This document shows, in pieces, positions 2,458 to 29,190 of a DNA stretch of 64,000 nucleotides. The stretch is taken from assembly GCF_046119375.1 (NCBI RefSeq), contig NW_027362768.1, forward strand, positions 328,042,001-328,106,000, written 5' to 3'. Under the pieces are notes generated by a model. The model ran no database searches, was not told the DNA's origin, and was given only the letters and a program-made list of their open reading frames with translations. Source of the stretch: Phyllobates terribilis. Lineage: Eukaryota. Positions within the stretch are counted from its first letter, which is position 1. Each line of letters opens with the position of its first letter. Both the position numbers and the translations under genes were made by a program.

Positions 2458-4168
2458 CAGTGCCGACGCCTCCCCTCATCATGGGTATGCATCACCACTT
2501 GTAAGCTAGTCTCCTGTTTCACTTTGTGTTTATGGCCACTGCACACGGTGATTAGAAACTGGCTGCATAGGTCTAGTATGTACTATACACTGCTTCATAC
2601 CTTGGATTTATTTGGTGACTATCCTGACATTGTTGCAGTGTATGGTAATTATTTAAAAAAATGAATGTTTCTAATATAGTTTTTAATTCTGGTGGTTTAT
2701 GGTTACTCCAATTTCTAGTTTGTGCATAATCCAGTTACTATAGATACCATAATGCCAGTATACAAGGAGCAGATATCGTCTCCTCCAACTCACTTTTTGA
2801 CAGAGTACAGTCCTGTGTCTCACCAGACCATTCAGACGCTGTCCGTCACATCCTCCTCCTGCCTCCATGCTAGTAGAGACTTGACCTCTGAATCTGCTCC
2901 TATTTCACAAGTTGTACATTTAGGAGTTTTCAGGTTTAAAACTGGTTGAAATCACACTTTTTTCTGCACAAAACATTTTTGGGGTTTTTGGTGTTCTTAC
3001 ACCAGTCCCAGCTTCAAACGGTGGTAGATACTTGTTCTACAGACCATAATAAAGTGATTACAGTCCAGGTAAATCTGTCTTTGGTAGTGTGGGAGAAAAC
3101 TATTGCATAGGGAGAGGACATAGACGCTCCATGCAGGTGTTGTCCATGCCATCCCCCTTTGATGATTCTTGCCTTATGTTCTGAGGATGCGGATACAGGG
3201 GGATGTGCTACTGTCCAGTGCCTCTAGGTTATTGGGAATCACATACTGGGGGTATTTTGCATCTGCGTCTTTTGTTTGCGTAGGGCTCTTTCCTACATCC
3301 ATGATCATTGATCTGATCAGATTACAATGCATGGACCGGCCGTGCATCTCCCGAGCCAGAGTGTGACTGCTTCATAGATTTCAATGAGGCCGTCACGCTC
3401 AGGGTTGGGAGACGCACGGCCGGTCTGTGCATTGTAATTGAGATCGGATATATGAAATAGCCCTTACAGCGACCACGCGGCATATGCATGATTGGCTGCA
3501 GTGGTCACAAGCTTTAGTGGTGCCGTCACTGCTGCAGCCTGGGGAGCAGGGGACTTGGTAAAGCCCAACATTGATGGGAGTTCAGAACTAAAAAATGCAA
3601 TTGTTTTTTTTTTCCTCTCTCTAGACTGAAAAAAAATGTGTAGTTAAGAGTGGATGCGATTTCATAAAAAAACCACCATTGGTTGTAATGTGATATTGCA
3701 CCCAGGTTCTAATAGATACGACCATCCGCCTCTGTTGTATATTTTGAAGAACTCCGCTATAGATTGCAGTTAGCGCTCCACTACTATCATGTTTTTTTTT
3801 TTTTTTTACCAGAAACAGCGCCACTCTTGTCTATGAGTTGTGTCTGGTATTACAGCTGTGGCACATTCATGTAAGCATGGCTAAGCTGCACTACCAGACA
3901 CAGCCAGGCCTGGTGCGGTTTTTCAAAATTAATTTCTGAATGTTTTTTCTATTAACCATCCCTCTCACCTCATACTGAATTTCTAGAAGGTTCGTATCAG
4001 GCCATTAGATCTTAAGTTAAGAAGCTAAAATATGCAAATTGTCTCTTCAGAGAGGAAGAGGATTTGAGCTCTAGCGCCATCGATTGGAAGCAGCGATCCT
4101 ACAAGTCAAGATTGACCTTTTAATGAGCCTTGTTATAGGACTTGGGGGAAAAAAAAAGTCAGACCAGA

Positions 4169-4229
4169 ATCTCAATTTGCAGACATGATGTTTTGGGGTA
4201 TTGCCCCTCGTCAGTGCAAAGTGTGAGAT
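4169..4229 (-). ncRNA. Type I hammerhead ribozyme copy with probably inactivating G12A
   Basis: Minus strand AUCUCA-CAC-UUUGCA-CUGACGA-GGGG-CAAUA-CCCC-AAAA-CA-UCA-UGUC-UGCAAA-U-UGAGAU; the GAAA box reads AAAA. Confidence 0.7.
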
Positions 4230-4275
4230 CTGGTTTGGCTTACCCCTTAGATCCCAGTCTTAGCCTCTCACCCAG

Positions 4276-4336
4276 ATCTCATACATTGCACTGACGAGGG
4301 GCGACACCCTGAAACACAGTGTCTGCAAATTGAGAT
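4276..4336 (+). ncRNA. Extended type I hammerhead ribozyme with intact catalytic core
   Basis: AUCUCA-UACA-UUGCA-CUGACGA(4291-4297)-GGGG-CGACA-CCCU-GAAA(4311-4314)-CA-CAG-UGUC(cleavage after 4323)-UGCAA-AU-UGAGAU; stems I, II and III all pair and stem I has an internal loop. Confidence 0.8.
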
Positions 4337-5131
4337 TCTAGTTTGGCTTTTTTCCGAAGTCATATTACAAGGGTCGACATTGACTTGTAGGATTGCTGCT
4401 TCCAATAGGTGGCACCAGAATTCCAATCCTCTTCCTCTCTGAAGAGACAATTTGCATATTTAATTTCCCAGAGGAGCATGCAATACTGGCGTGTCAGACA
4501 TGGCATGTCGCTCTGCATAAGGAGAAAACGTACCCCTTAGAGCCAAGTAAAGAAGCTGAAATTCTCATTTAAGACAAGGCGTGTGATCTTGGATTCTTAA
4601 AGAGTAACCGTTTGTTTTAATTTTTCATAAATCAATAGTTCACATGAAAATAAACTTATTTATCATATCAGAGAAATCTGCTTCTTTCCCATCATTCAAT
4701 AATACATTCAGGTGTAAAAAACAGTACTCAGTGAAGATAGATTTTTCCAATGACTGAGATTGGTGATGACAGTTGGTGTTTTTAAAATTCTATGGAGGAG
4801 GCGGAGCCAGAGGCAGACCAGTTCTCCATAGAATTTTATGAGTACTAACTGTCATCTATCTTAGTAATGGGGAAAAAATATCTGTATTTACTGAAGACAG
4901 GTTTTACCTGTGAATTGGGAATGAAAAATCATTACTAGAAGAGAAAGGAGCAGATTTCTGCTATATAATTTATAATTAGGGGTAAAAAAAGATCAACTCC
5001 ACCTCTCATCTCCATCCAAGATCACGTTATTACCAAGCCTCCGGCACTAAGACCGGTCAAAGATCTACAACATTAGAGAAAATGCCACTGATATGCTTCA
5101 ATGCTAATTTTTTTTTTTCTATTTCATTAAG

Positions 5132-8224: not shown

Positions 8225-8373
8225 CTAAATAACATTAAGGGTCTTTTTAACAGCAAATATGATGTCCTTCACTTGTGGTATGCAGTTATCTTCTAATATC
8301 TTGGCATAGGGCATGGGAACATCCGCACCGGTGACACGGAATACGGGAGCATCCAGGTAATTGAACGCAGGTC
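8225..8373 (-). CDS. PDHB: PDHB exon 10 (last)
   Basis: (G)[48 protein letters not shown]; AG acceptor at 8374-8375. Confidence 0.96.
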
Positions 8374-9347
8374 CTGTGGGAGACAAAAAAAAAATAATTA
8401 TCCATGTATTCCTAAATGTATGGTGCCGAGATGTACATAGATGTGTCTATAAGACAATCCCTGACACCCTTCAGAGAGACCATCTTGTAGATACCTTCTT
8501 AAAGGACTTGTCCTAAGGGGGTTTAACACTATCAACTTGACACCAGCACCCCTATCATGCACATGGGATACTATAATGAGCATCTCCCTTAACCAGCTCT
8601 ATCTGGTGACAAAGTCCTTTTAAAGGATGAAAAAAGCTTAAAAAAAAAAAAATGGAGTTCAATGTCTTGTAAAAAATCCCCGAGTGTCCCTGATTCAGAT
8701 ACTTTTTTCTGTTTTGCACTGCATCGCTCCATTGCAGAGATTTTCACATTTGTTGGTTTTGGAGCTCAGTATGTGAAATCTCCGCTTGTAGACCAACAGG
8801 ACATTTCTTCATCTCTGGAGGCGTCTGCTTTCACCCCTCCCTCCCAAGACTGCTAGATCAGTTGCAGAGTTGTGATTGGCAGTGTCTGAGAAAGCGGTGA
8901 AAAAGCACACCCTGAGAAAAGTCTCTGAAGCAAAAGCCACAACCAGTGATTTCACATACTGCGCTCTAAAAGCAACAAATGTGAATATCCCAGCAAAGGA
9001 GCGATGCATCGCAAAACGGAAAAAAGCATCAGAATTATGGGAGCTCAGGGATTTTTTTTTTTTTTTTTACAAGGTATTTAACTGAAAATGTTTAGCTAGT
9101 TACAGATCCTCTCTAAAGAGGGGGTAAGAATTCTCCATTTTGGGGAGCTACTCAGTATTAGAAAGTTCCCTCTACAACAACCTGCTGTTTAGACCCCAGC
9201 AATAAACAGTTATCGGATTATTTTTCCAGGAGCGCCACCTCAGGCAAAATGAAGCATTACACGGCTCCCTGTCAGCAACAGATATGATTTGTAGGTGCGG
9301 TTTCCTTCACAGACAAATAAAAATCTCTAACAACATGGGTTCCTTAC

Positions 9348-9489
9348 CTTCCATGATCTTCGCGCAGATTTCCGCTCCAACTCCAAATTGTGGCCAGCCG
9401 CCTTCTACAGTCACTAGATGGTTTGTCTTCACAACGCTGGCTTCGATGGTTTCAGTGTCCATTGGCCGGATGGTGCGCAAATTGATAAC
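9348..9489 (-). CDS. PDHB: PDHB exon 9
   Basis: 142 nt, [47 protein letters not shown]; AG/GT flanks. Confidence 0.97.
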
Positions 9490-9733
9490 CTTTATAAAAA
9501 CACGTGAGTTTAATCCGTTGACAATTTGAAAATACACGATTGTTATAGGGAACCTGACAGGACGATTGTACTAAAGAAAATAATAGTCATGTTGTAAGGC
9601 TCATAGAACAACAATGAAATAGATAGCCCTCTTGTAGTAAAATGGTTTTTTTTGTGATTCTGACTACATCTCAGTGTGCTGTGGTTCCTGTATGGTCCAC
9701 AGTCGGATGATAGCTGATAACTCCCAACATCTA

Positions 9734-10359
9734 AAGGCCCCGTCACACTAAGCGATGCAGCAGCGATCCCGACAACGATACGACCTGTCAGGGATCGTTG
9801 CTGCATCGCTAATACATCGCTGGTGAGCTGTCAAACAGGCAGGCTCACCAGCGATGAGGGGAGCAGCGACATCGTGGAAAGAATCGTTCCACGATGTCCT
9901 GCTCCCGTTACCAGCCTGCTGCAAGCAGGAGCAGGCTGGTAACTATGGTAAACATCGGGTTACTAAGTGCGCGTGTGCCCCTAGTAACCCGCTGTTTACC
10001 ATGGATACCACTCTGCTACCGTGCGCTGGAGCCTCCGCTCACAGTAGCAGAGTGGTATCTATGGTAAACAGCGGGTTACTAAGTGCGCGCGTGCCCCTAG
10101 TAACCCGATGTTTACCATGGTTACCAGCCTGATCGTTGGTCCCGCTGGTCACACACAACGATGTGTGCTGGCCAGCGGGAGGCCAACGACCAAAAAATGG
10201 TCCAGGACACTTTGCAACGATCAGCGACCTCACAGCAGGGGCCTGATCGTTGCAAAGTGTCACACATAGCGACATCGCTGGTGAGGTCGCTGGTGAGTCA
10301 CCAAAACCGTGACACAGCAGCGATCTCGCTAGCGATATCGCTTAGTGTGACGGGGCCTT
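9734..10359. mobile_element. Palindromic Harbinger-family MITE (same terminus as the 1-1314 element)
   Basis: AAGGCCCCGTCACACTAAGCGAT...ATCGCTTAGTGTGACGGGGCCTT, TA on both sides, nested internal inverted repeats. Confidence 0.85.
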
Positions 10360-10388
10360 TACTCTGACCTGACATTACAATTGATCAT

Positions 10389-11484
10389 TGCATTCATGTA
10401 CTGCCGGTGTTTCTGGCGCTGCATTCATGTACTGCCAGTGTTTCTGGCGCTGCATTCATGTACTGCCAGTGTTTCTGGCGCTGCATTCATGTACTGCCAG
10501 TGTTTCTGGCGCTGCATTCATGTACTGCCAGTGTTTCTGGCGCTGCATTCATGTACTGCCAGTGTTTCTGGCGCTGCATTCATGTACTGCCAGTGTTTCT
10601 GGCGCTGCATTCATGTACTGCCAGTGTTTCTGGCGCTGCATTCATGTACTGCCAGTGTTTCTGGCGCTGCATTCATGTACTGCCAGTGTTTCTGGCGCTG
10701 CATTCATGTACTGCCAGTGTTTCTGGCGCTGCATTCATGTACTGCCAGTGTTTCTGGCGCTGCATTCATGTACTGCCAGTGTTTCTGGCGCTGCATTCAT
10801 GTACTGCCAGTGTTTCTGGCGCTGCATTCATGTACTGCCAGTGTTTCTGGCGCTGCATTCATGTACTGCCAGTGTTTCTGGCGCTGCATTCATGTACTGC
10901 CAGTGTTTCTGGCGCTGCATTCATGTACTGCCAGTGTTTCTGGCGCTGCATTCATGTACTGCCAGTGTTTCTGGCGCTGCATTCATGTACTGCCAGTGTT
11001 TCTGGCGCTGCATTCATGTACTGCCAGTGTTTCTGGCGCTGCATTCATGTACTGCCAGTGTTTCTGGCGCTGCATTCATGTACTGCCAGTGTTTCTGGCG
11101 CTGCATTCATGTACTGCCAGTGTTTCTGGCGCTGCATTCATGTACTGCCAGTGTTTCTGGCGCTGCATTCATGTACTGCCAGTGTTTCTGGCGCTGCATT
11201 CATGTACTGCCAGTGTTTCTGGCGCTGCATTCATGTACTGCCAGTGTTTCTGGCGCTGCATTCATGTACTGCCAGTGTTTCTGGCGCTGCATTCATGTAC
11301 TGCCAGTGTTTCTGGCGCTGCATTCATGTACTGCCAGTGTTTCTGGCGCTGCATTCATGTACTGCCAGTGTTTCTGGCGCTGCATTCATGTACTGCCAGT
11401 GTTTCTGGCGCTGCATTCATGTACTGCCAGTGTTTCTGGCGCTGCATTCATGTACTGCCAGTGTTTCTGGCGCTGCATTCATGT
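10389..11484. repeat. 31-bp tandem array, about 35 near-identical copies
   Basis: Unit TGCATTCATGTACTGCCAGTGTTTCTGGCGC; produces the 31-aa-periodic ORFs in all three + frames. Confidence 0.97.
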
Positions 11485-11990
11485 AGCAATCCATAACGTG
11501 TTTCATGGCTGCGTTAAAACTTAAAGTGTCAAAACTTAGAGATTATGAGGAGAATTTGGAGTGTTTATTTTTATTTTAGAAGAACTCTCCAAATCATACT
11601 CAAAATGTGGTTTTGGTGATGTATTAATGCACTGATGGGGGCTCTGGTCATGTATTCATGCAACCACCCCTTTTAAAAAAAATTTGCAGCCCTTGGGAAT
11701 AGTGCAGTGTGGACCTTGGACCAAAAAAAATGTTGTGTAGCCCTGTTCTAAGGCCTATACAGCCAGACCACTAGCTTTGTAAAATTGTCATGACAATTTT
11801 AAGCGTGTTAACTTGGAAGCAGCTGGGTAGCAGTTACAACATATGGACGGCAGGGAGTACTCTTAAAACAGTCAAAGTGAAATTAATAGTGGGATAAAGT
11901 CATATCTACATAAGTGATATTCCTTGGAGAACTTTAGAGCACATTATTATAATATATACAATTACCAATCGTCATGATTAAACCATTTAC

Positions 11991-12082
11991 CTCGCAATCG
12001 ATTCCCTCCTTGGACAGCACGTTGGCAGCCTCTAAACAATGTCCCACAGATCGTGAATGGGAGACTAGAGTAATCTGATTAC
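11991..12082 (-). CDS. PDHB: PDHB exon 8
   Basis: 92 nt, (G)[30 protein letters not shown]; AG/GT flanks. Confidence 0.96.
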
Positions 12083-12741
12083 CTGTATGGGGAAAGAGGA
12101 GTAAGGTTACTCATTATACATGTTCATAAAACCTAAACCGCAAAAGTCTAAATGAGGGAAGAGTCAGAAATATTACTTTGTGTTGGGACAATCAAAATAG
12201 TATCTGAAGTCTAAAGGCAGAAAAGATCGAAACGGAGCTCCACATGAGCCATATCCATCTGCTCCTCTGTAAGGCCACGGCTCCACTATCAGTATTTTTT
12301 CTCAGGAGTGGGAGCCAAAACCAGGTGAGGAACAATCAGAGAAAAAGTATAATAGAAACAAGTCACTAATTCTGCATTTATCACCCACTCCTGGTTTTGG
12401 CTCCCACTCCTGAGAAAAAAATACTGATCCGATAGTGGGGCCGTGACCTTAAGGTCCTCATACACGTTAGATAAGTCGACTAAACCCGGCGTTTTCAGTG
12501 GGATTATCTGACCAGAGAAGGATCCAACTGTTTGAGTTTCAACACTTGATCCTCTTATTCGGCGGTGAGATAAGCAGCTGCCAGAGGAACTTGGCAGCGG
12601 CTGTCTCATAGATGACACAAATGCTCAGTCGATCCAGGCATTCCTGTGTATGGGGGTCTCAGGGGAGACAGCTGATGTGTATGGACCGCTTTAGTTTTTC
12701 ATGAACATAAGGTAAAGACATGAAACACAATATGATCTTAC

Positions 12742-12852
12742 CTTGTCGCTCTATCTTTGCCTTTCCAATAGGAATAACAAAGTCTTTAGACTGAACTTCA
12801 TCAGATAGTTCAAAGGGGACGCCGTACATCAGCTCGTTCTCCAGTACAACCA
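12742..12852 (-). CDS. PDHB: PDHB exon 7
   Basis: 111 nt, (V)[36 protein letters not shown]; AG/GT flanks. Confidence 0.96.
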
Positions 12853-12928
12853 CTGAAAGTTATAGGAACGGGTCAGCATGGAAACAATACAAAACAGCAG
12901 AATAATGGCAGATTGTTAGAAAACTCGC

Positions 12929-13214
12929 CTGGGTTATTATCTCGGATGGCAGCTTTCATAAGACCTCTAGCGTCCTCAGCGTTCCAGGGGCTCACCACCT
13001 TCAGTCCAGGGCAGTGTCCGTACCAGGCCGCAAAGCATTGGGAGTGCTGGGCCGCGACACCAGCCGATGCGCCATTGGGCCCCCGGAACACGATGGGGAC
13101 AGGCACCAGGCCCGCCGACATGTAATAGGTCTTAGCAGCAGAGTTAATGACTTGATCGATGGCTTGCATGGAGAAGTTGAAAGTCATGAACTCACAGATT
13201 GGCCTCAACCCGGC
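12929..13214 (-). CDS. PDHB: PDHB exon 6 (GC donor at its 3' end)
   Basis: 286 nt, [35 protein letters not shown]...AAIRDNNP; donor reads CAG/GCGAGT. Confidence 0.96.
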
Positions 13215-13293
13215 CTGTTATACATAGAATATTAATTATATATACACATACACGGTCATGTACAGTATGTTGGCACAAAGGTCATCCACTTAC

Positions 13294-13329
13294 CATAGCA
13301 GCACCAACAGCAATCCCAGCAAATCCCAT
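13294..13329 (-). CDS. PDHB: PDHB exon 5
   Basis: 36 nt, MGFAGIAVGAAM; AG and GTAAGT flanks. Confidence 0.95.
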
Positions 13330-14565
13330 CTAAACATGGTGAAAAAAAATTATACATTTTATCAGCCCTTTTCAATCAATCAATCTTAACACAACACATT
13401 AAGGACAAAAATTGTTTTTAGAACAAGAGAAATCATTAAAATATTATTATCGTCATAATCATCAGGCAGAGAAGAGTAGGATCTGCATTTACCTGTCCTT
13501 TCACCCAAAACCAGAGTAAAAGCACAGTCTTGCTCCTCTTATGCCCCCTCAACCAATTGACCCATAAAAGGATATTCCAATTTATTTATTTTTTCTCCCC
13601 TTCTTCCAAGAGCCATAACTTTTTTATTTTTCTGTCAATATACCCACCTGAGGGCTTGTTTTCTTGAGGGACGAGTTGTACTTTTGTATGACACCATTTA
13701 TTTTTATTATCATGTGATGCACTGGAGAGCGGGGAAAAAACTCCAAGTGCGTTGAAATTGCAAAAAAAAAAAAAAAGTGCAATTTCACAATAGTTTCTTT
13801 TCTTCTTATTTATTTACAATGTTCACTATACGGTAAAACAGACCTGGCAATAGGGTTCTCCAGGTCAGTACGAGTACGCAGATACCAAACATTGTGTTTT
13901 ATTTCCCCCCATTTAATTAATTGGTTAAAAAAAAAAAACACACCTATTGGAAATTTATGAAAAAAAAATAATTTTTGTTCATAATTTCCAAGATTTGTAA
14001 TGTTTTTGTTTTTTTGGGATCTGTGGATGGGTAAAGGCCTATTTTTGGTGCCCTGAGCTGACATTTTTTATTGGTACCATTTTGGGGTAGATAAGAGGTT
14101 TTGATTGCCTCACAGAGGTCAAATATGTCCAAGAACGGGCCCTGATTTTCTCTAAAAATTGTCACTCAATTCCTATTGGCCGGTTCCTTCTATCAGCACT
14201 ATAGGAGCTGGAACGTCCTTTCCCCTCACTTCCCAGCATGCACTGCACTTGCCATTATCCAATATCTTGCATTCCCTAAACTCAAAGCCCACCTCTCCTC
14301 AGTATGCAGTTCAACAGGTCAGGAGAGCAGGAGCAGAGGCACAAAGCCCCGACCCTCCCTCTCCCTGTAATCCTGGCGTCTCTGCTGCTAGAGACGGATT
14401 ACACTTGACAGCAGGTTACACAATAGGGAGACACTTATCGACCAGCACAATGTGATTTGCTTAAACTGAAAACATCACTTTGGGTCTTTGCACATCATAA
14501 GGGCGTACGTTTATAGAAATGACAGGCACCATCAAGTCTCCGGAGTGCACACGTTAAAAGTGTAA

Positions 14566-15529
14566 GGCTATGTGCCCACGATGCAGAAATGCTCCGGATT
14601 TTTCCTGAGCGTTTCTGCATCTCCCTGGCAGAAAAAACGCATGTGGATTGTACATGTGGATTGTACATGAGTTTTTCATGCCAGGGACATGTGGATGTGA
14701 AGCGTTCTTCACTTGCATTTCCACTTGCGGGTTGACAAGCGCTTTCCAAGCGATTTTAGCATCACTTGGAAAGTGCTTGACAACTTGGTCACACTATATA
14801 AATCCATGCAAACGGCATATATAGTGTGACCGAGAGAATGTCAAAAAATAAAAAATAAATCTATACTTACCTTCCGATGGCCCCCGCAGTCTTGCTTCAC
14901 CGTCCCGGCTGCCGGCAGATCGCGTTACACTGAAGGACCTGCTGACGTCAGCGTCGCGTGACCCGTCACATGACTATGACGTCAGCGCAGGTCCTTCAGT
15001 TCATCGCGAACTGCCGGCATGCGAGGAGGAGCACATCGGAGGCCGCCAGAAGGTAAGTATATATTTATTTATTTATTTATTTTTTTTTACAGTTTTCTAT
15101 GGTACCCGAGTCCGGAGGAGAGTCTCCTCTTCTCTAGACCTGGGTACCATCCGCACATTGGAACGCATGGATTGCGCATCTACATATACAGTGATGCGTA
15201 ATCCATGCGGTTTAATGCAAGTCAATGGCGGCGAAAACGCAGCACTTCCGCAAAATAATTTGGTAGTGCTGCGTTTTTTTCCGCAATGATAATCCTCAGC
15301 GGACATTTCCGCAGCATGTGCACAGCACATGCGGATCATCATTTGGGGACATGGCAGGCCTTCTACCAAGCGTTTTTTAAGCGTTTCTACAGCGTTTTTG
15401 CAGCTGCGGAAAAGCTTAAAAAACGCATCGTGGGCACACAGCCCAGTTGGCTCACACGTAACTTTATGTAAATGTGGATAATTCTTGCAGAAAATATCTG
15501 CAACTAACCTGCCGAATGTGAACATACCC
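14566..15529. mobile_element. Harbinger-type non-autonomous element with internal hairpins
   Basis: TAA-GGCTATGTGCCCAC...GTGAACATACCC-TTA termini; internal hairpin ACTGAAGGACCTG...CAGGTCCTTCAGT at about 14929-15000. Confidence 0.65.
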
Positions 15530-15779
15530 TTATAGGAGGTTCATTAAAGTAAATCTTTACTCCAGGCAATATTAGGGTATATTCTCACACACACTAGATT
15601 TGTGTTTGCAGCAATTTCAGTCTTGCGTCTGGAAACTTAAGACAATTCCACGCAAATCAGAAGTTTCCTATAAATGCAGGTACATTCTTAATGATAATTC
15701 ATCGAGCACTTATATTTTTGGGGTTCAGAGACAACCAATGTCTGATGACATTGCTTCCATCGTCATAGAAGCCGCATAC

Positions 15780-15842
15780 CTCCGATATAGGGGTGTCCAT
15801 GATCCTTTTATCGCCGTACTTTTTCCAAAGACCTCTGCTGAT
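15780..15842 (-). CDS. PDHB: PDHB exon 4
   Basis: 63 nt, [21 protein letters not shown]; AG/GT flanks. Confidence 0.96.
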
Positions 15843-16701: not shown

Positions 16702-17198
16702 GGGCTCTTTCAAACGTCAGTATCTCTGATACAAGTGGTGTCCATTTCCCTACGTACTGGAGACACTGACACACGCAAACCCATTCAAATGAATGGCTCT
16801 GTGTTCACCTCAGTGTGTTTCTACGGACCGTGTGTCCGTGTGCTCCACACGGAGACAAGTCCATTTTTTTTGTGGATACACGGTCCACAAAACATATCAC
16901 ACGGATGACATCCGTGTGTCTTCAGTGTGACATGGACCAGCGCCTGGGAATCAGCGCTACAGTTGTTCCCAAGTGCCGGGTACTGAACACTGCCCTCATC
17001 ATGGTTCCCTGCCGGCGCTGCGGTCAGCACCAGCAGGGATCAATGATGAAGGCAGTGTTCAGGAACAGCGCTACCTATAGCGCTGTTTGCCAGGCGCTGT
17101 TAAGTATGATCCTGATGCGGCACACGGTTGCCACACACTCGGACATACGGGACACACATATCTCCGGCACCAGAAATATGCGGACGTGTGAAACCGGC
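16702..17198. mobile_element. Harbinger-type palindromic MITE
   Basis: GGGCTCTTTCAAACGTC...GACGTGTGAAACCGGCC flanked by TTA/TTA; self-complementary interior. Confidence 0.6.
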
Positions 17199-17380
17199 CT
17201 TATATTGTGTAGGTCCTCCTTGAGCAGCCAGTTCCGCGCTGACCAAATGAGGCAAGGAGTCCACAAAACCTCTATAGGTCTCCTGTTGTATCTGGCACCG
17301 AGATGTCAGCAGCAGATTCTTTAAAATGACTGTTCAAACCAATCACAGGAACTCAGTGCACCCTTGGTGTGGCCGAGCAG

Positions 17381-17679
17381 CAGGGCTGTGGAGTCAGTAA
17401 GCCAAACCTCCGACTCCTCAATTTCCATGACTCCGACTCCCTCATACATGGCTCATGTTTAAGTGATAAATCTACTGTAGCACAGATTAATCTCAGCTAA
17501 AATCTCTAGACCCTTAGATCAGAAATAGGACATTTCATAACTTTCCCAAATTCTTACGAAAAAATATTCCCCACAAACTGCATTGAACTACTGTACTCAA
17601 TTTATTATATATTTTAGGAGTCGGTCCATTTTATACCGACTCCACCAAAATGGGCTCCAGCTCCGACTCCACAGCCCTG
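17381..17679. mobile_element. hAT-family MITE
   Basis: TIR CAGGGCTGTGGAGTC...GACTCCACAGCCCTG; 8-bp TSD CCGAGCAG/CCGAGTAG (7 of 8). Confidence 0.85.
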
Positions 17680-18302: not shown

Positions 18303-18458
<156 letters not shown>

Positions 18459-18799
18459 CTACAACAGCAAGAAAAAATAAATAAATTAAAAAAAAAAATG
18501 AATGGTGATTTACTGAGCACCAAAACACTGATACAAGCCTTACACCGGGCACCACTTTGTGCCTCGTGTGACATTCTGCATGATCTAGTGGAGCGCGGGC
18601 AAAACATCATGGGAAAGAGGAGCGGTGGAGACTCACAACTGTGCTCCAAAACTACACCGAAACCCATCACACCCAGATCGGCTGCAGATTTTCCACACTG
18701 CGTTTTTTTGTAGCTTTATCTTAATGCATTTTTTCTTGCCCAAAAAACAATGTAGTCAGATTTTACATGAAAGATATATATTTTTTTTGCTTTGGTGGC

Positions 18800-20260
18800 T
18801 TTCTTTTGGGTCATAAAGTTTGATGGTGGAACCAGTCGTACGGCCATTTCTCCAAAGTGTCCCAGGAGCTGTTTTCCAACATCACAACTCCAGGCTACAT
18901 GTTCCTCGTGCTACTGTGAGCAGCCTGTCTGGCCTAAATGTAAATATGCTACCATGGTCTGCAGCCTCTCCAGACTTGTCTCCCATCACAAAGTCAATAG
19001 AAGCACCTTCTTTTAGATACATGTGCACACAATCAGAAATTTTGTAGGATTCTAATCAGGTGTGTGAGTAACCAATTATACCAAAAACGTGATAATTGTC
19101 ATTTTCATATGTAGGCTCCAAAACATTAAAGGGAAACAGAAACAGCTGTGATGGAGGCATAAAACTGGATGAACCTCTGATGAGGTTGTGGAAAAGTTTC
19201 ACGTCACAGACTGAGCACAGCAACAAGACACTAGGAAGTTATACTTCATCAAGGTAAAGATTTCAAAGCAGACTGAGTGCTCAACGAACGTGCTCGGATA
19301 AGGTGTTATCAGAGCACGCTCCGCTGCCGAGTAGCTTCGGAGTGCTCGAATACTATGAGTTGCCGCAGCTGGTAAACAGCCGCAACACATGCAGGGATAA
19401 CCTGTTTGTTAGGCAATCCATGCATGTGGTGCAGCTGTCTAACAACTGAAGACTCGAACATAGTATTCGAGCACGCAAAAGACACTGTTAGCACCCGAAC
19501 GTGCAAGGATAACACCTTATCCGAGCATGTTCGCTCAACACTATTCTTTGACCCTTTTTGAAAAGGCACCAAGAAATGGGCAACGTTGAGGACTGAAGAC
19601 ACAGTGGTCGGCCAAGGAAACTTAGTGCAGCAACTGAAAAACACATCATGCTTACATCCTATATGTCCAGCAGTACCATCGGCTCAGAACTGGAAGCAAC
19701 ACCAGTGGGACCCGGCTACACCAATCTTCAGAGGAGAAGTTTGACCAGAAATGGTCTTCATGCAGTGGTGAAACTGGAGTCCAATGGGCCCTGGCACAAA
19801 ATTTGAACCTAGGCTCCCAACATGCAAGTTGGTCAGATGTATGGGCCCTTGTAGCGTCCTAGATCCTATAAAGACATAGGTGTTTGCTCCCCATGTAATA
19901 ATCTCCCTGATCCTGACCCCTTCTGGGCCCCATACAGTAACACCCCATACCTGTTTTGCAGCTCTTCTCCAACACATTTAAAAAATAAAGGATTCTTCTC
20001 ACCTTCCTCTACTCCAATGACGTGCGGTATCTTCTACCACACTGCCATGCGCAGCCTATGACGGGCACGCCAACGTCACCTGCTGGCCTCTAATTGGCCT
20101 GCAGCGTGTATGGCAGTGCAGGGAGCCGGAGAGTGCGTCCTCAGATTAATGGTGCCCTCAATGCTGAGAAATACAGGCAGATACTTATCCATCATGGGCT
20201 ACCATAAGGAAGGCGCCTGATTGGCTGCAAATTTATCCTGCAGTAGGACAACGAACGTCA
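18800..20260 (+). mobile_element. Cluster of decayed Tc1/mariner transposase fragments, interrupted by a palindromic MITE (about 19270-19542)
   Basis: 18820-19047 reads VVRPFLQSVPGAVFQHHNSRLHV...LPWSAASPDLSPI (decayed DDE region); about 20150-20260 resembles INGxLNAEKYRQILIHH...FILQ; N-terminal-like DNA at 19100-19770. Confidence 0.6.
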
Positions 20261-21575: not shown

Positions 21576-22100
21576 CAAATAACAGAATAGTAGACAGTTG
21601 GTTTATATGCTGCTATCATGGATTACTACAATAATTGTCACCATTTGATCCACTTTAGAAGTAATTAAAGACGCTGCGTGTGACAATACCATCTACAGAT
21701 ATATTTATATTAAGTCTCAGAGCAATACCCTAATTACAGTCTATTTCCTTGTACTACAACAGTCTTAGTTGTGTTACCGTATTATTGTTTTTTGATTTAT
21801 TACTAGATTTGCTTCTGTAGACACTGCAGTTCCAGTTGTGTGCTTTGCGTAATACAGTGTTAACTATTATATGGGATACATTCCCCACCACCTTACATGG
21901 TATCTTGGGATTGCTGTATATTGATATATCTGTTTATTTATCTGTCAGATTTTAAAGGCATCTGTGCAATATAGATCTATACTAAGGGTGAGGGGGCAAT
22001 ACTGAAGGGGCTACACTGGGGGGCAGCACGCACACGGACATACAGGATCCACAGTCACACCTGCACCAGTCACTGTCAGTCAGGGCAGGGGGCTCCTCAC

Positions 22101-22160
22101 CTGGAGGGCGGCGGGGGAGCTCCTGTGGAATTCTCTCCTTAGGATCACGGCTACATGGCT
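22101..22160 (-). CDS. PDHB: PDHB exon 2 (mitochondrial transit peptide)
   Basis: 60 nt, SHVAVILRREFHRSSPAALQ; CAG acceptor and GTGAG donor. Confidence 0.9.
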
Positions 22161-22227
22161 CTGTGGAGACACGGAGAGCGTTAATACCCGTCACACCCAG
22201 CCCCCCACATCCCTGCTCCCTCCTCAC

Positions 22228-22263
22228 CTTCCCCTCACAGAGTAGTCTCCTCAGCGCCGCCAT
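22228..22263 (-). CDS. PDHB: PDHB exon 1 (start codon)
   Basis: AAG-ATG-GCG context, MAALRRLLCEGK, donor GTGAGG; total CDS 1083 nt keeps frame to the stop at 8225. Confidence 0.9.
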
Positions 22264-22289
22264 CTTTCCTCTGCCCTCTGACAAGACGT

Positions 22290-22520
22290 CGCCCTTCGCC
22301 TGAGACCTCCAATCAGAGCACGGTAATGACCGTCTCTTCGTCAGGTGACCACATTAGACCAATCAGAAGTCAGAAAGGGTACAACGCCTCTATCGTGCCT
22401 TCGCTTTAGTTATGGGGGCGTGGAGAAAAGAAATGGTTGCCATGCAGCGTCCAATCACAGCGCAGGAATAGAAAAAAAAAAAGTGTACGGGAAGCAAAGA
22501 GGAGCATTTGTATCATTCTC
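22290..22520. promoter_or_regulatory. PDHB promoter with three CCAAT boxes, possibly bidirectional with KCTD6
   Basis: CCAATC at 22309, 22359 and 22451 in a locally CpG-richer segment just upstream of the PDHB ATG. Confidence 0.6.
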
Positions 22521-22646
22521 CCGGATCTGTAGGAGGAGTCGCAGTCTGGCACACAGGCCTCGGATTTACTCCTGTACACACCGGGGAGATCGCAGAGCTG
22601 AGGATCTCCCTGCTGGGATCACACCACCCCCGGCAGACAGCATCAG
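22520..22646 (+). other. Candidate non-coding first exon of KCTD6 (5' boundary approximate)
   Basis: Strong donor CAG/GTGAGG at 22646/22647, facing away from PDHB; no upstream acceptor seen. Confidence 0.4.
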
Positions 22647-22899
22647 GTGAGGGCGGGGATGTGAGGCCTGGGTGGCAGGCGGGATGGGCTCCGATCGTCT
22701 CTTTCTATCATTGTGGCTGCAGACTGTCACCTCCTAGTGGAGACACATCTGCCTGTTATACATCATCTCACCATAATCCAGATGATGCTTCCGATCGTTA
22801 TGATCGTACCGATCTGCAAGATTATTTTTGTACAATGGCTATATATATATATATATATCTGCTGCACATAGAGCAGCGATCTGATCTGTCCTCCTGGAA

Positions 22900-23288
22900 T
22901 ACACTGTACCCCAGAGCGGCACTCACTAATCTGCTGGTGCAGTCGCTGTGTACATACATTACATTATTGATCCTGAGTTACATCCTGTATTATACTCCAG
23001 AGCTGCACTCACTATTCTGCTGGTGCAGTCACTGTGTACATACATTACATTATTGATCCTGAGTTACATCCTGTATTATACTCCAGAGCTGCACTCACTA
23101 TTCTGCTGGTGCAGTCACTGTGTACATACATTACATTATTGATCCTGAGTTACATCCTGTATTATACTCCAGAGCTGCACTCACTATTCTGCTGGTGCAG
23201 TCACTGTGTGCATACATTACATTACTGATCCTGTATTATACTCCAGAGCTGCACTCACTATTCTGCTGGTGCAGTCACTGTGTACATA
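22900..23288. repeat. 86-bp minisatellite, left part (split by CR1)
   Basis: Unit ...TACATACATTACATTATTGATCCTGAGTTACATCCTGTATTATACTCCAGAGCTGCACTCACTATTCTGCTGGTGCAGTCACTGTG; period 86 (22951 to 23037). Confidence 0.92.
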
Positions 23289-25947
23289 CATAGAATCATA
23301 GAATGGTAGAGTTGGAAGGGACCTCCTGGGTCATCTGGTCCAACCCCCTGCTCAAAGCAGGATTCACTAGATCATCTCAGACAGATGTCTGTCCAGCCTC
23401 TGTTTGAAGACGTCCATTGAAGGGGAACTCACCACCTCTCGTGGCAGCCTGTGCCACTCATTAATCACCCTAACTGTCAAAAAGTTTTTTCTAATATCTA
23501 ATCTGTGTCTCCTCCCATTCAGTTTCATCCCATTGCTTCTAGTCTTTCCTTGTGCAAATGAGAATAAAGATGATCCTTCTACAATGTGACAGCCCTTGAC
23601 ATATTTGTAGACAGCTATTAAGTCTCCTCTCAGTCTTCTTTTTTGCAAGCTAAACATTCCCAAATCCTGCAACCGTTCCTCATAGGACATGGTTTGCAGA
23701 CCAGTCACCATTCTGGTCGCTCTTCTCTGAACTTGCTCCAGTTTGTCTATGTCTTTTTTAAAATGTGGTGCCCAAAACTGTACACAGTATTCCAGATGAG
23801 GTCTGACCAAAGAGGAGTAAAGACCGATAATGACTTCACGTGATCTAGACTGTATGCTTCTGTTAATACATCCCAGAATTGTATTTGCCTTTTTTGCTGC
23901 TGCATCACACTGTTGACTCATGTTCAGTCTATGATCTATTAGTATACCTAAGTCTTTTTCACATGTACTGTTGCTTAGCTCTATTCCTCCCATTCTGTAT
24001 ATGCTTTTTTCATTTTTATTGCCCAGATGTAGTACTTTGCATTTTTCCCTGTTAAAAACCATTCTGTTGGTTGCTGCCCACTGCTCCAGTTTATTTAGGT
24101 CTTTTTGAATCCTCTCTCTCTCTTCTCTAGTATTAGCTATCCCTCTTAGCTTTGTATCATCAGCAAATTTAATCAGTTTACCCTCAATTCCTTCATCTAA
24201 ATCATTGATAAAGATGTTGAACAATACAGGTCCCAGGACGGAGCCCTGTGGTACCCCACTTGAGACATTCATCCAGCTGGATGTGAAGCCATTTACAACC
24301 ACCCTTTGAGTCCGATCACTAAGCCAGTTATGAATCCACCTAACAGTTGCCTGGTCCATTGCATACTTGGTCATTTTTTCAATAAGGATGGTGTGAGATA
24401 CTTTGTCAAATGCTTTGCTGAAGTCAAGATATACTATATCTACAGCATTTCCCTGATCCACCCAGTCAGTGATTCTGTCATAGAAGGAAATTAAGTTAGT
24501 CTGACATGACTTGTTAGTTACAAACCCATGCTGACTCTGGTTAATCACTTCATTCTTATCCATGTACTTACATACATGTTGTTTAATAATTTGTTCAAAG
24601 ATCTTTCCTGGTATAGAAGTCAGACTCACCGGCCTATAGTTCCCTGGGTCCACCTTCTTCCCCTTTTTGAAGATAGGAACAACATTTGCTCTTCTCCAGT
24701 CTTCTGGGACTTCTCCTGTTCTCCAAGAATTTTCAAAGATTATGGAGAGTGGTTCTAAAATTTCTTCTACGATCTCCTTCAGTACTCTGGGGTGTAATTC
24801 ATCTGGACCTGGAGACTTGAACTCATTTATGTTAGCTAAATATTCCCTCACAATCTTTCTGTTTACAGATAACTTGGATTCCTCTATTCCTTTAAAAGGA
24901 CAGTGAAGATCAGTTGATGTTACATTTTCTTTCTGAGAGAAAACAGATGCAAAATAGGAATTAAAAAGTTCGGCCTTCTCAACATCCTCTCTTACCATTT
25001 CTCCATTTTCATCCTGTAAAAATCCTATAGCATCTTTGACTTTTCTTTTACTTTTGACATACCCCCAAAATCCTTTTTTATTGCTTTTGACATCTCTTGC
25101 AAGCCTTAATTCATTGTCAGCTTTAGCTAACCTGATACGTGCCCTGCAGGATCTGCAGACTGCATTATAATCTTCTTTAGATATGCCTCCCTCTTTCCAT
25201 TTAATAAACATTTCTTTCTTTCTTTTTAGCATGTGTTTAAGTTCTGTGTTCACCCATCCTGGTTTCCTTAAATGCTTCCCATTCTTCCTACTTTTCGGGA
25301 TTGTTAACGATTGTGCTTTGAGAATCTCATTTTTAAAAATTTCCCATCCTTCCTGGACATTTTTGTCCTTAAGGACATCCAGCCATTGGATCCCTCCTAT
25401 TCTCTTTCTGAGTCTCTTAAAATCTGCCTTTCTAAAATCTAACCTTGAAGTTTGAGTCTTCACATGTCTTCCTCCTCTAGTTATCCAAAATTCTATAATA
25501 GCATGATCGCTGCCTCCTAGGGTCCCAGCCACCTTTACCTCCTCAACCATTTCCTCCCTGTTTATAAGAATTAGATCCAAAGTAGCAGATCCCCTTGTTT
25601 TCTCCCCTACCTTTTGGAAGATAAAGTTGTCAGCAAGAGAGGATAAGAATTTGCTTGACCTGTTAGTTTTACTTGAGAGAGATTCCCAACAAATGTCTGG
25701 ATAGTTGAAATCTCCCATGACCACTACGTCATATTTTTTGGAGAACTTGGTCATTTGATGCATAAAGAGTTCATCCATATCTTCAGCTTGCCCAGGTGGC
25801 CTGTAGTAAATGCCTACAATGGTGTCCTTTCCATTGTTCTCTCCTTGTATTCTTACCCAAACAGTTTCCACAGAACTCCTAGTCTCTGAAGCTTCAATCT
25901 CTGTGCAGATATACGCTTTTCTAACATACAATGCAACACCTCCTCCT
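23289..25947 (-). mobile_element. CR1-clade LINE, 5'-truncated, young
   Basis: 3' end ...ATTCTATGATTCTATG (CR1 octamer tail) at about 23289; breaks off just upstream of GGGVALYV in the endonuclease domain. Confidence 0.95.
23367..25931 (-). CDS. CR1 ORF2: apurinic endonuclease (N-terminally truncated) plus reverse transcriptase
   Basis: 854 uninterrupted codons with GDFNYPDI, SDH, GNYRPVSLT, DFSKAFD, GVPQGSVLGP and FADD motifs. Confidence 0.93.
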   Translation of the reverse strand: MYVRKAYICTEIEASETRSSVETVWVRIQGENNGKDTIVGIYYRPPGQAEDMDELFMHQMTKFSKKYDVVVMGDFNYPDICWESLSSKTNRSSKFLSSLADNFIFQKVGEKTRGSATLDLILINREEMVEEVKVAGTLGGSDHAIIEFWITRGGRHVKTQTSRLDFRKADFKRLRKRIGGIQWLDVLKDKNVQEGWEIFKNEILKAQSLTIPKSRKNGKHLRKPGWVNTELKHMLKRKKEMFIKWKEGGISKEDYNAVCRSCRARIRLAKADNELRLARDVKSNKKGFWGYVKSKRKVKDAIGFLQDENGEMVREDVEKAELFNSYFASVFSQKENVTSTDLHCPFKGIEESKLSVNRKIVREYLANINEFKSPGPDELHPRVLKEIVEEILEPLSIIFENSWRTGEVPEDWRRANVVPIFKKGKKVDPGNYRPVSLTSIPGKIFEQIIKQHVCKYMDKNEVINQSQHGFVTNKSCQTNLISFYDRITDWVDQGNAVDIVYLDFSKAFDKVSHTILIEKMTKYAMDQATVRWIHNWLSDRTQRVVVNGFTSSWMNVSSGVPQGSVLGPVLFNIFINDLDEGIEGKLIKFADDTKLRGIANTREERERIQKDLNKLEQWAATNRMVFNREKCKVLHLGNKNEKSIYRMGGIELSNSTCEKDLGILIDHRLNMSQQCDAAAKKANTILGCINRSIQSRSREVIIGLYSSLVRPHLEYCVQFWAPHFKKDIDKLEQVQRRATRMVTGLQTMSYEERLQDLGMFSLQKRRLRGDLIAVYKYVKGCHIVEGSSLFSFAQGKTRSNGMKLNGRRHRLDIRKNFLTVRVINEWHRLPREVVSSPSMDVFKQRLDRHLSEMI

Positions 25948-26481
25948 CATTACTGATTACATTACTGATCCTGTATTATACTGTATTATACTTCAGAGCT
26001 GCACTCCCTATTCTGCTGGTGCAGTCACTGTGTACATACATTACATTACTGATCCTGAGTTACATCCTGTATTATACTGCAGAGCTGCACTCACTATTCT
26101 GCTGGTGCAGTCACTGTGTACATACATTACATTACTGATCCTGTATTATACCCCAGAGCTGCACTCACTATTCTGCTGGTGCAGTCACTGTGTACATACA
26201 TTACATTACTGATCATGTATTATACTCCAGAGCTGCACTCACTATTCTGCTGGTGCAGTCACTGTATTCATACATTACATTACTGATCCTGTATTATACT
26301 CCAGAGCTGCACTCACTATTCTGCTGGTGCAGTCACTGTGTACATACATTACGTTACTGATCCTGACTTACATCCCGTATTATACTCCAGAGCTGCGCTC
26401 ACTATTCTGCTAATGCAGTCACTGTGTACATACGTTACTGATCCTGAATTACATGCTGTATTATACTCCAGAGCTGCACTC
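25948..26481. repeat. 86-bp minisatellite, right part (with shorter variant units)
   Basis: The same unit resumes directly after the CR1 5' junction. Confidence 0.92.
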
Positions 26482-29163: not shown

Positions 29164-29190
29164 ATGGATAATGGAGACTGGGGGTACATG
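29164..29190 (+). CDS. KCTD6: KCTD6 first coding exon part (MDNGDWGYM)
   Basis: Matches the conserved KCTD6 N-terminus; acceptor at 29118-29119, donor GTGCGG at 29191. Confidence 0.92.

What the first reader, a model, noticed from the sequence alone, without database searches (positions are those of the whole stretch)
4030..4460. Palindromic element with two extended type I hammerhead ribozymes, one with an intact core
Seen: the plus copy (4276-4336) has CUGACGA and GAAA boxes, a GUC site at 4321-4323, a 4-bp stem II with pentaloop, a 3-bp stem III, and a stem I of 5 bp + internal loop + 6 bp. The minus copy (4169-4229) has the same fold with G12A. Established: an internal loop in stem I contacting loop II marks hammerheads active at physiological Mg2+; amphibian examples include newt satellite 2 and Penelope-associated motifs, usually arranged in tandem. 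Inference: an inverted, outward-facing ribozyme pair in a non-coding element is an unusual arrangement and may be a poorly described retrozyme or PLE-derived family.
Basis: partly seen in the sequence, partly recalled or inferred. Interest (0 to 1): 0.82.

Follow-up and report, generated by a model that had tools for sequence, protein, structure and literature searches.

The report
Decayed head-to-head hammerhead retroelement insertion
The "palindrome" is an old, dead insertion of a small frog retroelement that carries a hammerhead ribozyme and landed as two copies head to head, a layout already described for Penelope-like elements, so it is an ordinary relic.

Summary
A type I descriptor finds the plus copy as the only hit in 64 kb, with none in 300 shuffles. 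Rfam gives no hammerhead hit, and neither core is canonical: the plus copy has a G10.1-U11.1 wobble and the minus copy has G12A.

The 434-bp palindrome is not a transposable unit. It is two 5'-truncated copies of a roughly 290-350-nt HHR-bearing repeat, joined head to head with their 3' ends outward. The whole structure (about 4032-4544) is flanked by an 18-bp direct repeat (16/18).

Eleutherodactylus coqui has the same family at non-orthologous sites:
- A shorter inverted pair, truncated before the HHR, has its own 22-bp flanking repeat (18/22).
- A single, non-palindromic copy longer than one unit carries an HHR whose helix I keeps pairing through three double changes.

This rules out a MITE. 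It matches the published insertion pattern of Penelope-like elements and non-LTR retrozymes: variable 5' truncation, an adjacent inverted copy, copies longer than one unit, and long variable target duplications.

The arms differ by about 15% (K2P), so the insertion is old. It lies about 3.8 kb downstream of PDHB. No copy-number survey and no link to a PLE ORF was possible. Verdict: new member of a known kind, low interest.

The parts
4014..4031 (.). Left copy of the target-site duplication (AAGTTAAGAAGCTAAAAT). Its last 4 nt overlap the end of the minus copy (microhomology).
   Evidence: It matches 4545-4562 at 16/18. The local alignment extends to 4002-4031 vs 4534-4562. Zero of 2000 shuffled left flanks and 2 of 2000 random genomic 60-mers reach the score.
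4028..4243 (-). Inverted (minus-sense) 5'-truncated copy. Its 3' end is at about 4028-4032 and its 5' end at about 4243. It lacks the last ~87 nt of the unit.
   Evidence: The nhmmer family profile matches 4275-4028(-), E=6e-71. Alignments A1 and A3. TAAGCCAAACCAG upstream of the HHR is shared with E. coqui copy Ec2.
4163..4235 (-). Minus-strand type I hammerhead with G12A. CUGACGA is the complement of 4208-4214, the AAAA box is the complement of 4191-4194, and C17 is the complement of 4182.
   Evidence: The HHR-constrained fold is -22.6 kcal/mol against an MFE of -25.4.
4244..4548 (+). Forward (plus-sense) copy, slightly longer than one unit. Its 5' end is at about 4241-4244 and its 3' end at about 4544-4548.
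   Evidence: The nhmmer profile matches 4237-4549(+), E=1.4e-80. CCTCTCAC (4264-4271) and the 3' region are shared with E. coqui copies.
4271..4342 (+). Plus-strand type I hammerhead. The core bases are intact, 10.1-11.1 is G-U, and the predicted cleavage site is 4323/4324.
   Evidence: The HHR-constrained fold is -12.4 kcal/mol against an MFE of -19.6, so the monomer fold is not favoured.
4241..4258 (+). Terminal redundancy of the plus copy: TACCCCTTAGATCCCAGT is repeated at 4531-4548 (16/18). The spacing of 290 nt is the inferred unit length.
   Evidence: the repeat finder family D1. The matching 3'-end motif TACCC(C)T is present in Ec1 and Ec2.
4462..4548 (+). 3' region of the plus copy that lies outside the palindrome (CCCAGAGGAGCATGCA ... 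GCTCTGCATAAGGAG ... TACCCC...).
   Evidence: It is homologous to the 3' regions of the E. coqui copies.
4545..4562 (.). Right copy of the target-site duplication (AAGTAAAGAAGCTGAAAT).
4028..4461 (.). Read-through RNA would fold into a hairpin with a stem of about 200 bp.
   Evidence: RNA fold -284 kcal/mol, z=-26.6.

Best explanation
This is a relic retro-insertion of a small, non-coding, hammerhead-bearing repeat with a unit of about 290-350 nt. The repeat is of the animal non-LTR retrozyme / Penelope-like-element pLTR kind.

At one staggered break in the target, two cDNA copies of the element RNA were laid down head to head. The plus copy (about 4244-4548) is just over one unit long. The inverted copy (about 4243-4028) is 5'-truncated at a different point and ends 87 nt earlier at its 3' side. 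The 3' ends face outward, the 5' ends meet at about 4243/4244, and the whole is flanked by a target duplication of about 18 bp.

In the family's life cycle the type I hammerhead would cut multimeric transcripts into unit RNAs. It probably acts as a dimer through its short quasi-palindromic helix III. The unit RNAs would then be copied by a PLE-type reverse transcriptase/endonuclease supplied in trans.

Here both ribozymes have decayed, the arms have diverged by about 15%, and the locus is intergenic. It most likely does nothing now, although read-through transcription would give a long hairpin RNA.

Shown: motif anatomy, family homology across two frogs, variable truncation, flanking duplications. 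Inferred: the both-strand priming route, dimeric action, trans-mobilisation by a PLE.
For: - The motif is real and non-random.
- The same family occurs in E. coqui at non-orthologous sites. Ec1 (L002 8324-8695) is an inverted pair truncated before the HHR. Ec2 (L002 about 17097-17524) is a single forward copy with an HHR and about 100 nt of a preceding unit; its repeat spacing is 347.
- Homology between Ec2 and the window covers the HHR plus body: E=1.6e-10 and 2e-5.
- Helix I proximal pairs differ by three double changes that keep pairing: G-C/A-U, U-A/C-G, U-A/G-U.
- Long direct repeats flank both inverted pairs just outside the profile-defined ends: 16/18 here and 18/22 in Ec1, with 0/2000 and 0/1000 shuffles reaching the score.
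- The non-palindromic centre is element sequence that belongs to the longer copy, both here and in Ec1.
- Ec2's HHR aligns end to end with Rfam Hammerhead_HH9 at 14.8 bits, E=0.26.
- Literature. PLE insertions are 5'-truncated, partial tandems, often with an adjacent inverted 5'-truncated copy and variable-length TSDs (PMC8557442). A purified PLE protein cleaves and extends both target strands in vitro (PMC11167929). Opposite-strand PLE hammerhead pairs are reported (PMC4209133). Animal retrozymes have 170-400-nt units and TSDs longer than 4 bp, and the amphibian HHRs act as dimers (PMC7229834). Vertebrate retrozymes derive from PLE pLTRs and are enriched in intergenic regions (bioRxiv 10.64898/2026.07.22.740005).
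Against: - Only three insertions (five copies) from two species were available, so there is no genome-wide census.
- No PLE ORF with a matching pLTR was found. A regex scan found no GIY-YIG or PLE RT motif in the window or in L001/L002.
- No true tandem array of the unit was seen.
- No flanking duplication was found for Ec2.
- PLE hammerheads are usually minimal forms without helix III (PMC6155905), whereas this one is canonical. That fits retrozymes better than PLE pLTRs proper.
- No Rfam hammerhead hit for the window copies.
- The extent of the right-hand duplication is ambiguous: 4534-4548 could be element sequence or target.
Confidence: 0.75

Rival explanations
1. It is a palindromic MITE or foldback DNA transposon that happens to carry a hammerhead in each terminal inverted repeat, moved by a DNA transposase.
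For: There is a near-complete 434-bp palindrome. A possible 3-bp TAA duplication sits at 4026-4028/4461-4463 if the ends are set at 4029 and 4460. A second palindromic relative exists in E. coqui.
Against: - The TAA match carries little information in A/T-rich ends.
- Homology to the E. coqui copies runs 87 nt beyond the palindrome on one side only.
- Ec2 is a single, non-palindromic copy.
- The inner ends of the arms differ between insertions.
- The flanking repeats are 18 and 22 bp long and differ in length.
Confidence: 0.06
2. A single retrozyme copy inserted normally, and a later local inverted duplication (replication or repair error) made the palindrome.
For: The two arms share most of their length. 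Palindromes can arise by fold-back repair.
Against: - The direct repeat flanks the whole two-copy structure.
- An independent insertion in another species has the same head-to-head build with its own flanking repeat.
- The layout is a recurrent, described outcome of PLE insertion (PMC8557442).

A variant cannot be told apart from both-strand priming with these data, and I count it under the best explanation: snap-back self-priming of one cDNA at the time of insertion.
Confidence: 0.1
3. It is a host-domesticated, functional ribozyme or regulatory hairpin, like the conserved intronic HH9/HH10 of amniotes.
For: The hammerhead architecture resembles HH9. The hairpin RNA potential is very strong.
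Against: - Both cores are altered at conserved positions, and G12 is the general base (PMC6155905).
- The arms are 14% different, with a transition and CpG bias typical of neutral decay.
- The site is intergenic, about 3.8 kb past PDHB.
- The relatives in E. coqui are at other sites.
Confidence: 0.03
4. The hammerhead-like motif is a chance resemblance inside an unrelated repeat.
For: There is no Rfam hammerhead hit. The monomer HHR fold is not the MFE.
Against: Zero descriptor hits in 300 shuffles. The same motif, in register, is present in a homologous E. coqui copy with compensatory helix I changes and a full-length weak HH9 alignment.
Confidence: 0.02

Closest known systems
Animal non-LTR retrozymes (Cervera & de la Pena 2020, PMC7229834; Li, Clavereau & Pollet 2026 preprint)
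   Same: It is a small non-coding unit of about 290-350 nt with one canonical type I hammerhead: helix I of 6 bp plus an internal loop, helix II of 4 bp, and a short helix III with a quasi-palindromic loop. Copies are longer than one unit, TSDs are much longer than 4 bp, and the site is intergenic.
   Different: No tandem array was seen. Here it is a head-to-head pair. RNA circles are untested, and both ribozyme cores have decayed.
Penelope-like element insertions (pLTR with HHR, adjacent inverted 5'-truncated copy; PMC8557442, PMC4209133, PMC11167929)
   Same: Variable 5' truncation, inverted copy with 3' ends outward, partial tandem (copies longer than one unit), variable-length TSD, alternative 3' ends, and a hammerhead in the repeated part.
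   Different: There is no RT/GIY-YIG ORF in the element or the window. PLE hammerheads are usually minimal forms without helix III, whereas this one is canonical.
Rfam Hammerhead_HH9 (RF02275) and Hammerhead_1 (RF00163)
   Same: The type I topology matches. The E. coqui relative aligns over the full HH9 model, including the CAAAAA-type loop II and the UAC-type internal loop.
   Different: Scores are far below gathering (14.8 vs 52), and the window copies get no hit at all. HH9 is a conserved single-copy intronic motif, not a dispersed repeat.
Newt satellite 2 / Schistosoma Sm-alpha hammerhead repeats
   Same: Type I hammerhead with a weak helix III that is expected to need a dimer; repeat-borne.
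   Different: Those occur as tandem satellites or SINE-like units. This is one inverted pair of a dispersed family.
L1 twin-priming inversions
   Same: Two cDNAs primed from both sides of one staggered break would give an inverted structure bounded by one TSD.
   Different: L1 inversions place the inverted 5' segment in a different geometry (an inversion within one copy). The enzyme would be a PLE-type RT/GIY-YIG, not L1 ORF2p. This comparison rests on my own knowledge and was not tested.

Membership tests
Hammerhead ribozyme, type I | Conserved core C3 U4 G5 A6 N7 G8 A9 / G12 A13 A14 / A15.1-U16.1 / H17 | tested here: inconclusive
   Plus copy: all present. Minus copy: G12 is A. E. coqui Ec2: 16.1 is A.
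Hammerhead ribozyme, type I | Conserved G10.1-C11.1 pair closing helix II | tested here: not met
   The plus copy has G-U. The minus copy has G-C but carries G12A.
Hammerhead ribozyme, type I | Three helices in type I order, supported by covariation | tested here: met
   Helices I, II and III are present in both arms. Three double changes in helix I between the window and Ec2 keep pairing. Only 3 sequences were compared, so support is modest.
Hammerhead ribozyme, type I | Match to Rfam hammerhead covariance models at gathering score | tested here: not met
   No hit at gathering or at E<=10 for the window. Ec2 scores 14.8 bits against HH9, whose gathering score is 52.
Hammerhead ribozyme, type I | Self-cleavage at the predicted site | not testable with these tools
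   Needs in vitro transcription and end mapping.
Animal non-LTR retrozyme | Non-coding unit of about 170-400 nt with a type I HHR and no LTR/PBS/PPT | tested here: met
   The unit is 290 nt (redundancy 4241/4531) or 347 nt in Ec2. ORFs are at most 60 aa, and the 60-aa ORF has no meaningful protein relative.
Animal non-LTR retrozyme | Tandem (multimeric) genomic arrangement | tested here: inconclusive
   Only copies of just over one unit were seen (plus copy about 1.06 units, Ec2 about 1.2-1.3 units). No array was found in the DNA available.
Animal non-LTR retrozyme | TSD longer than the 4 bp of plant LTR retrozymes | tested here: met
   18 bp (16/18) here and 22 bp (18/22) in Ec1.
Animal non-LTR retrozyme | Expressed as linear and circular unit-length RNAs | not testable with these tools
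   No RNA data for this species.
Penelope-like element | ORF with PLE-type RT and GIY-YIG endonuclease | tested here: not met
   None in the element. A regex scan found no GIY-YIG or PLE RT motif in the window, L001 or L002. The only RT is a CR1 LINE. So this is at most a non-autonomous or truncated derivative.
Penelope-like element | Insertion architecture: 5' truncation, partial tandem, adjacent inverted 5'-truncated copy, variable TSD | tested here: met
   compared with PMC8557442.
Penelope-like element | Optional 30-40-bp 'tail' at one end | tested here: inconclusive
   The 3' ends differ between copies: the minus copy ends at 4028-4032 and the plus copy runs 87 nt further. Ec1's arms also differ. 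The extra stretch is longer than the described tail.
MITE / foldback DNA transposon | Terminal inverted repeats on every copy, flanked by a short TSD of fixed length | tested here: not met
   Ec2 has one arm only. The flanking repeats are 18 and 22 bp. The TAA candidate is uninformative.

The most novel reading that the evidence does not exclude
The family is an undescribed, abundant retrozyme lineage of hyloid frogs with an HH9-like canonical hammerhead: three insertions were found in about 110 kb sampled from two species. Under this reading its TSD-bounded head-to-head pairs, with different 5' and 3' end points in the two copies, are genomic footprints of the both-strand cleavage-and-extension activity so far seen only in vitro for a PLE protein. 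Such pairs would also be a steady source of long hairpin RNA.
Probability: 0.3. Interest if true: 0.45.

Novelty: new member of a known kind. Interest (0 to 1): 0.28.

Why it matters
It matters little on its own, since it is a dead copy of a known kind of element. It does have three modest uses:
- It is a worked example showing that an apparent "palindromic ribozyme element" can be an insertion artefact of PLE-type retrotransposition.
- It shows that canonical hammerhead repeats in frogs can escape the Rfam models.
- TSD-bounded inverted pairs like this could be mined genome-wide to test how PLE enzymes prime on both target strands.

Tried and rejected
- Rfam at gathering score and at E<=10 gave no hammerhead hit for the window. 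The only strong hit, SSRC8_2 at E=4.4e-6, is an artefact of the long hairpin.
- Exact-pattern scans for the HHR core and for the terminal 24-mer found nothing in viral, metagenome or genome contigs. Those collections are not eukaryotic.
- I searched the element's 60-aa ORF against protein representatives to find translated copies. Only two irrelevant hits came back.
- Paper and supplement searches for the core string found nothing relevant.
- I tried to harvest frog DNA through TE proteins. The CR1 ORF returned bird, turtle and lizard hits, and the Tc1 ORF returned fish hits.
- The KCTD6 route gave DNA only for E. coqui and Leptodactylus fuscus. Dendrobates, Hyla, Gastrophryne and the bullfrog genome assemblies (its only DNA was short Logan transcript contigs, L004-L007) were too large to fetch, and the X. 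tropicalis product was not on record.
- L. fuscus has no copy of the family.
- I tried to use the window as the empty site for Ec1. The alignment fades at L002 8310, just before the insertion, and cannot be picked up on the other side.
- The TAA, TTAA and TA duplications at the palindrome ends were rejected as uninformative.
- The count of structure pairs was not used. MAFFT puts Ec2 one column out of register in helices II and III, so pairs were counted by script instead.
- The species was not identified. KCTD6 is 226/228 identical to Dendrobates tinctorius, and coding DNA is about 85% identical to E. coqui, so it is a hyloid frog.
Full report
**1. Observation**

The region 4028-4461 is a near-palindrome. 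Arms 4028-4120/4369-4461 are 87% complementary and arms 4152-4233/4272-4353 are 85% complementary. Self reverse-complement blastn gives 77% over 454 columns, and there is no other copy in the window.

The plus strand carries a type I hammerhead exactly as described: CUGACGA at 4291-4297, helix II GGGG/CCCU with a CGACA loop, GAAA at 4311-4314, helix III ACA/UGU with a CAG loop, and GUC at 4321-4323. Helix I is UUGCA/UGCAA followed by an internal loop and a distal stem. The minus strand has the same build, with CCCC followed by AAAA, i.e. G12A.

A descriptor for type I hammerheads (core boxes, three helices, H17) finds only the plus copy in both strands of the 64 kb, and nothing in 300 dinucleotide-preserving shuffles. 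The motif is therefore not a chance match.

There are three qualifications:
- Rfam gives no hammerhead hit at gathering score or at E<=10.
- The plus copy has a G-U wobble where hammerheads conserve G10.1-C11.1. The minus copy lacks G12, the general base of the reaction (PMC6155905).
- As a monomer, the hammerhead fold is less stable than alternative folds: -12.4 vs -19.6 kcal/mol for the plus copy and -22.6 vs -25.4 for the minus copy.

The two core changes sit on the two bases of one CpG. They are the two outcomes expected from deamination on either strand if both arms started alike. This is an inference. Seven of the 18 transitions between the arms are in CpG context.

**2. What the palindrome really is**

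The window comes from a hyloid frog. Its KCTD6 exon (30136-30822) is 226/228 identical to Dendrobates tinctorius, and the gene order is PDHB(-)/KCTD6(+)/ACOX2(-).

The KCTD6 loci of Eleutherodactylus coqui (L001, L002) turned out to hold two relatives of the element at non-orthologous positions.

Ec1 (L002 8324-8695) is also an inverted pair. Its arms match only the outer part of ours (91% over 46 nt) and stop before the hammerhead.

Ec2 (L002 about 17097-17524) is a single forward copy with no inverted partner. It contains a hammerhead (CUGAUGA, GGGG/CCCU, GAAA), followed by the body and the 3' region. Upstream it carries about 100 nt that repeat the 3' region, with a spacing of 347.

A profile built from the five copies gives these extents:
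- window plus copy: 4237-4549
- window minus copy: 4275-4028
- Ec1: 8333-8518(-) and 8512-8696(+)
- Ec2: 17149-17524

Three consequences follow:
- The plus copy here runs 87 nt beyond the palindrome on the right. This stretch contains CCCAGAGGAGCATGCA, GCTCTGCATAAGGAG and TACCCC, all shared with the E. coqui 3' regions.
- The non-palindromic centre is element sequence. CCTCTCAC (4264-4271) belongs to the plus copy, and TAAGCCAAACCAG (complement of about 4231-4243) belongs to the minus copy. Both are shared with Ec2. The 14-nt centre of Ec1 likewise belongs to its plus copy.
- The plus copy begins with TACCCCTTAGATCCCAGT (4241-4258) and ends with the same motif at 4531-4548 (16/18, spacing 290). 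It is therefore slightly longer than one unit, as expected from a tandem or circular template.

**3. Flanking duplications**

Immediately left of the minus copy lies AAGTTAAGAAGCTAAAAT (4014-4031). Immediately right of the plus copy lies AAGTAAAGAAGCTGAAAT (4545-4562), a 16/18 match. The alignment extends to 4002-4031 vs 4534-4562. No shuffled left flank out of 2000, and 2 of 2000 random genomic 60-mers, reach its score.

Ec1 is flanked in the same way by a 22-bp repeat (18/22; 0 of 1000 shuffles) that abuts the profile-defined ends. No duplication was found for Ec2.

One ambiguity remains. Positions 4534-4548 resemble the left flank (12/16) and the element's own junction motif (16/18). The simplest reading, which is an inference, is that the nicked target annealed to a similar stretch of the template RNA. 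The left side would then keep the target's version, and the right side would carry the element's version.

**4. Mechanism**

These are the published marks of Penelope-like element insertions and of the animal non-LTR retrozymes now thought to derive from PLE pLTRs:
- variable 5' truncation
- different 3' end points
- copies longer than one unit
- long duplications of differing length
- an optional inverted partner with 3' ends outward

The supporting literature is as follows:
- PMC8557442 describes the adjacent inverted 5'-truncated copy and the variable TSD.
- PMC4209133 reports PLE hammerheads 100-700 bp apart on opposite strands.
- PMC11167929 shows a purified PLE protein cutting and extending both target strands and starting reverse transcription at internal sites.
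- PMC7229834 gives the 170-400-nt units, the TSDs longer than 4 bp and the dimer-dependent amphibian hammerheads.
- The 2026 preprint links vertebrate retrozymes to PLE pLTRs and to intergenic sites.

The most likely history is one insertion event in which cDNAs were primed from both sides of a staggered break, or one cDNA snapped back on itself. The data cannot separate these two routes.

The hammerhead was under selection in the family. Between the window copies and Ec2, three of the six proximal helix I pairs changed on both sides and still pair. The long distal helix I is fully paired in Ec2. With only three sequences this is suggestive, not proof.

Helix III plus its loop is quasi-palindromic in both arms. 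The self-duplex energies are -8.4 and -5.2 kcal/mol, and the loops differ by a C-G to U-A exchange. This fits dimeric action.

Ec2's motif aligns over the whole Rfam HH9 model, though weakly (14.8 bits, E=0.26).

**5. Present state**

The arms are 164/190 identical (K2P 0.154, 18 transitions and 8 transversions, plus indels), so the insertion is old.

PDHB exons lie on the minus strand from 15833 down to 8303. I located them with short peptides recalled from memory, most of which matched exactly. The element is therefore about 3.8 kb downstream of the last coding exon and is intergenic.

A read-through transcript would fold into one hairpin with a stem of about 200 bp (-284 kcal/mol, z=-26.6). 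That fold would bury both ribozymes. It could feed small-RNA pathways, but this is untested.

**6. Rivals**

- A MITE is excluded by the single-arm copy, the one-sided extension and the long unequal duplications.
- A later local duplication is unlikely, because the duplication bounds the whole pair and Ec1 repeats the pattern independently.
- Domestication is unlikely given the core damage and neutral-looking decay.
- Chance is excluded by the shuffles and by the homologous motif in another species.

**7. Limits**

No eukaryotic genome search was available, so copy number, the share of tandem versus inverted copies and the autonomous partner are unknown. No PLE ORF motif was found in the window or the loci. 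The family name in Repbase or Dfam, if there is one, could not be checked.

**Verdict:** The arrangement is the known one and the copy is dead.

Noticed in passing
L002:8324-8695 and L002:17097-17524 (also L001 about 8474-8697 and 19330-19764): Two copies of the same hammerhead-repeat family lie within 25 kb of the E. coqui PDHB-KCTD6-ACOX2 locus. One is an inverted pair without the HHR and one is a single copy with it. Together with the window copy, that is 3 insertions in about 110 kb, which hints at a very abundant family.
   Followed up: yes
window 3900-4600 (hit 4150-4353, minus strand): Rfam SSRC8_2 (a Streptococcus sRNA) hits the palindrome at E=4.4e-6 in the small-region search. This is a false positive driven only by the long hairpin.
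   Followed up: partly
window 10389-11485: A 31-bp unit is repeated 35 times at 99% identity inside a PDHB intron. It creates spurious ORFs of 359-378 aa in all three plus frames.
   Followed up: no
window 23367-25931 (-), with 22907-23291 and 25981-26482: A CR1-type LINE has an uninterrupted 854-aa ORF (endonuclease plus RT). Its best matches are 75-80% identical (tegu lizard proteins and a Logan contig). Tandem arrays of the same 74/86-bp unit sit on both sides of it.
   Followed up: partly
window 40905-41621 (+): A Tc1-like transposase N-terminal fragment is 84-90% identical at the protein level to Tc1 transposases of cyprinid and salmonid fishes. Only one of the 120 listed hits is named as a frog protein (Leptobrachium). 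This is compatible with the fish-frog Tc1 sharing that I recall from the literature.
   Followed up: no
window 33584-34712 and 44496-44976: Further tandem arrays: a 394-bp unit repeated 2.9 times (83% matches) and a 31-bp unit repeated 15.6 times (94% matches).
   Followed up: no
window 4259-4275 compared with the PAc template RNA printed in PMC11167929 (Methods): The stretch just upstream of the hammerhead (CCTCTCACCCAGA) resembles CCTCTCTCACCCTAGA in the pLTR of the Anolis Poseidon PLE, upstream of its hammerhead. The match is short and low in complexity, so it may be chance.
   Followed up: no
window 3839-3902: A small hairpin with 19-nt arms (89% complementary) and a 26-nt loop lies about 130 bp left of the insertion. 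It looks like part of another short repeat.
   Followed up: no
window 8303-15833 (-), 18346-18466, 22099-22659, 29074-29201, 30136-30822: Gene content of the window: PDHB on the minus strand and KCTD6 on the plus strand, arranged head to head as in Dendrobates, Hyla, Eleutherodactylus, Leptodactylus and Gastrophryne.
   Followed up: partly
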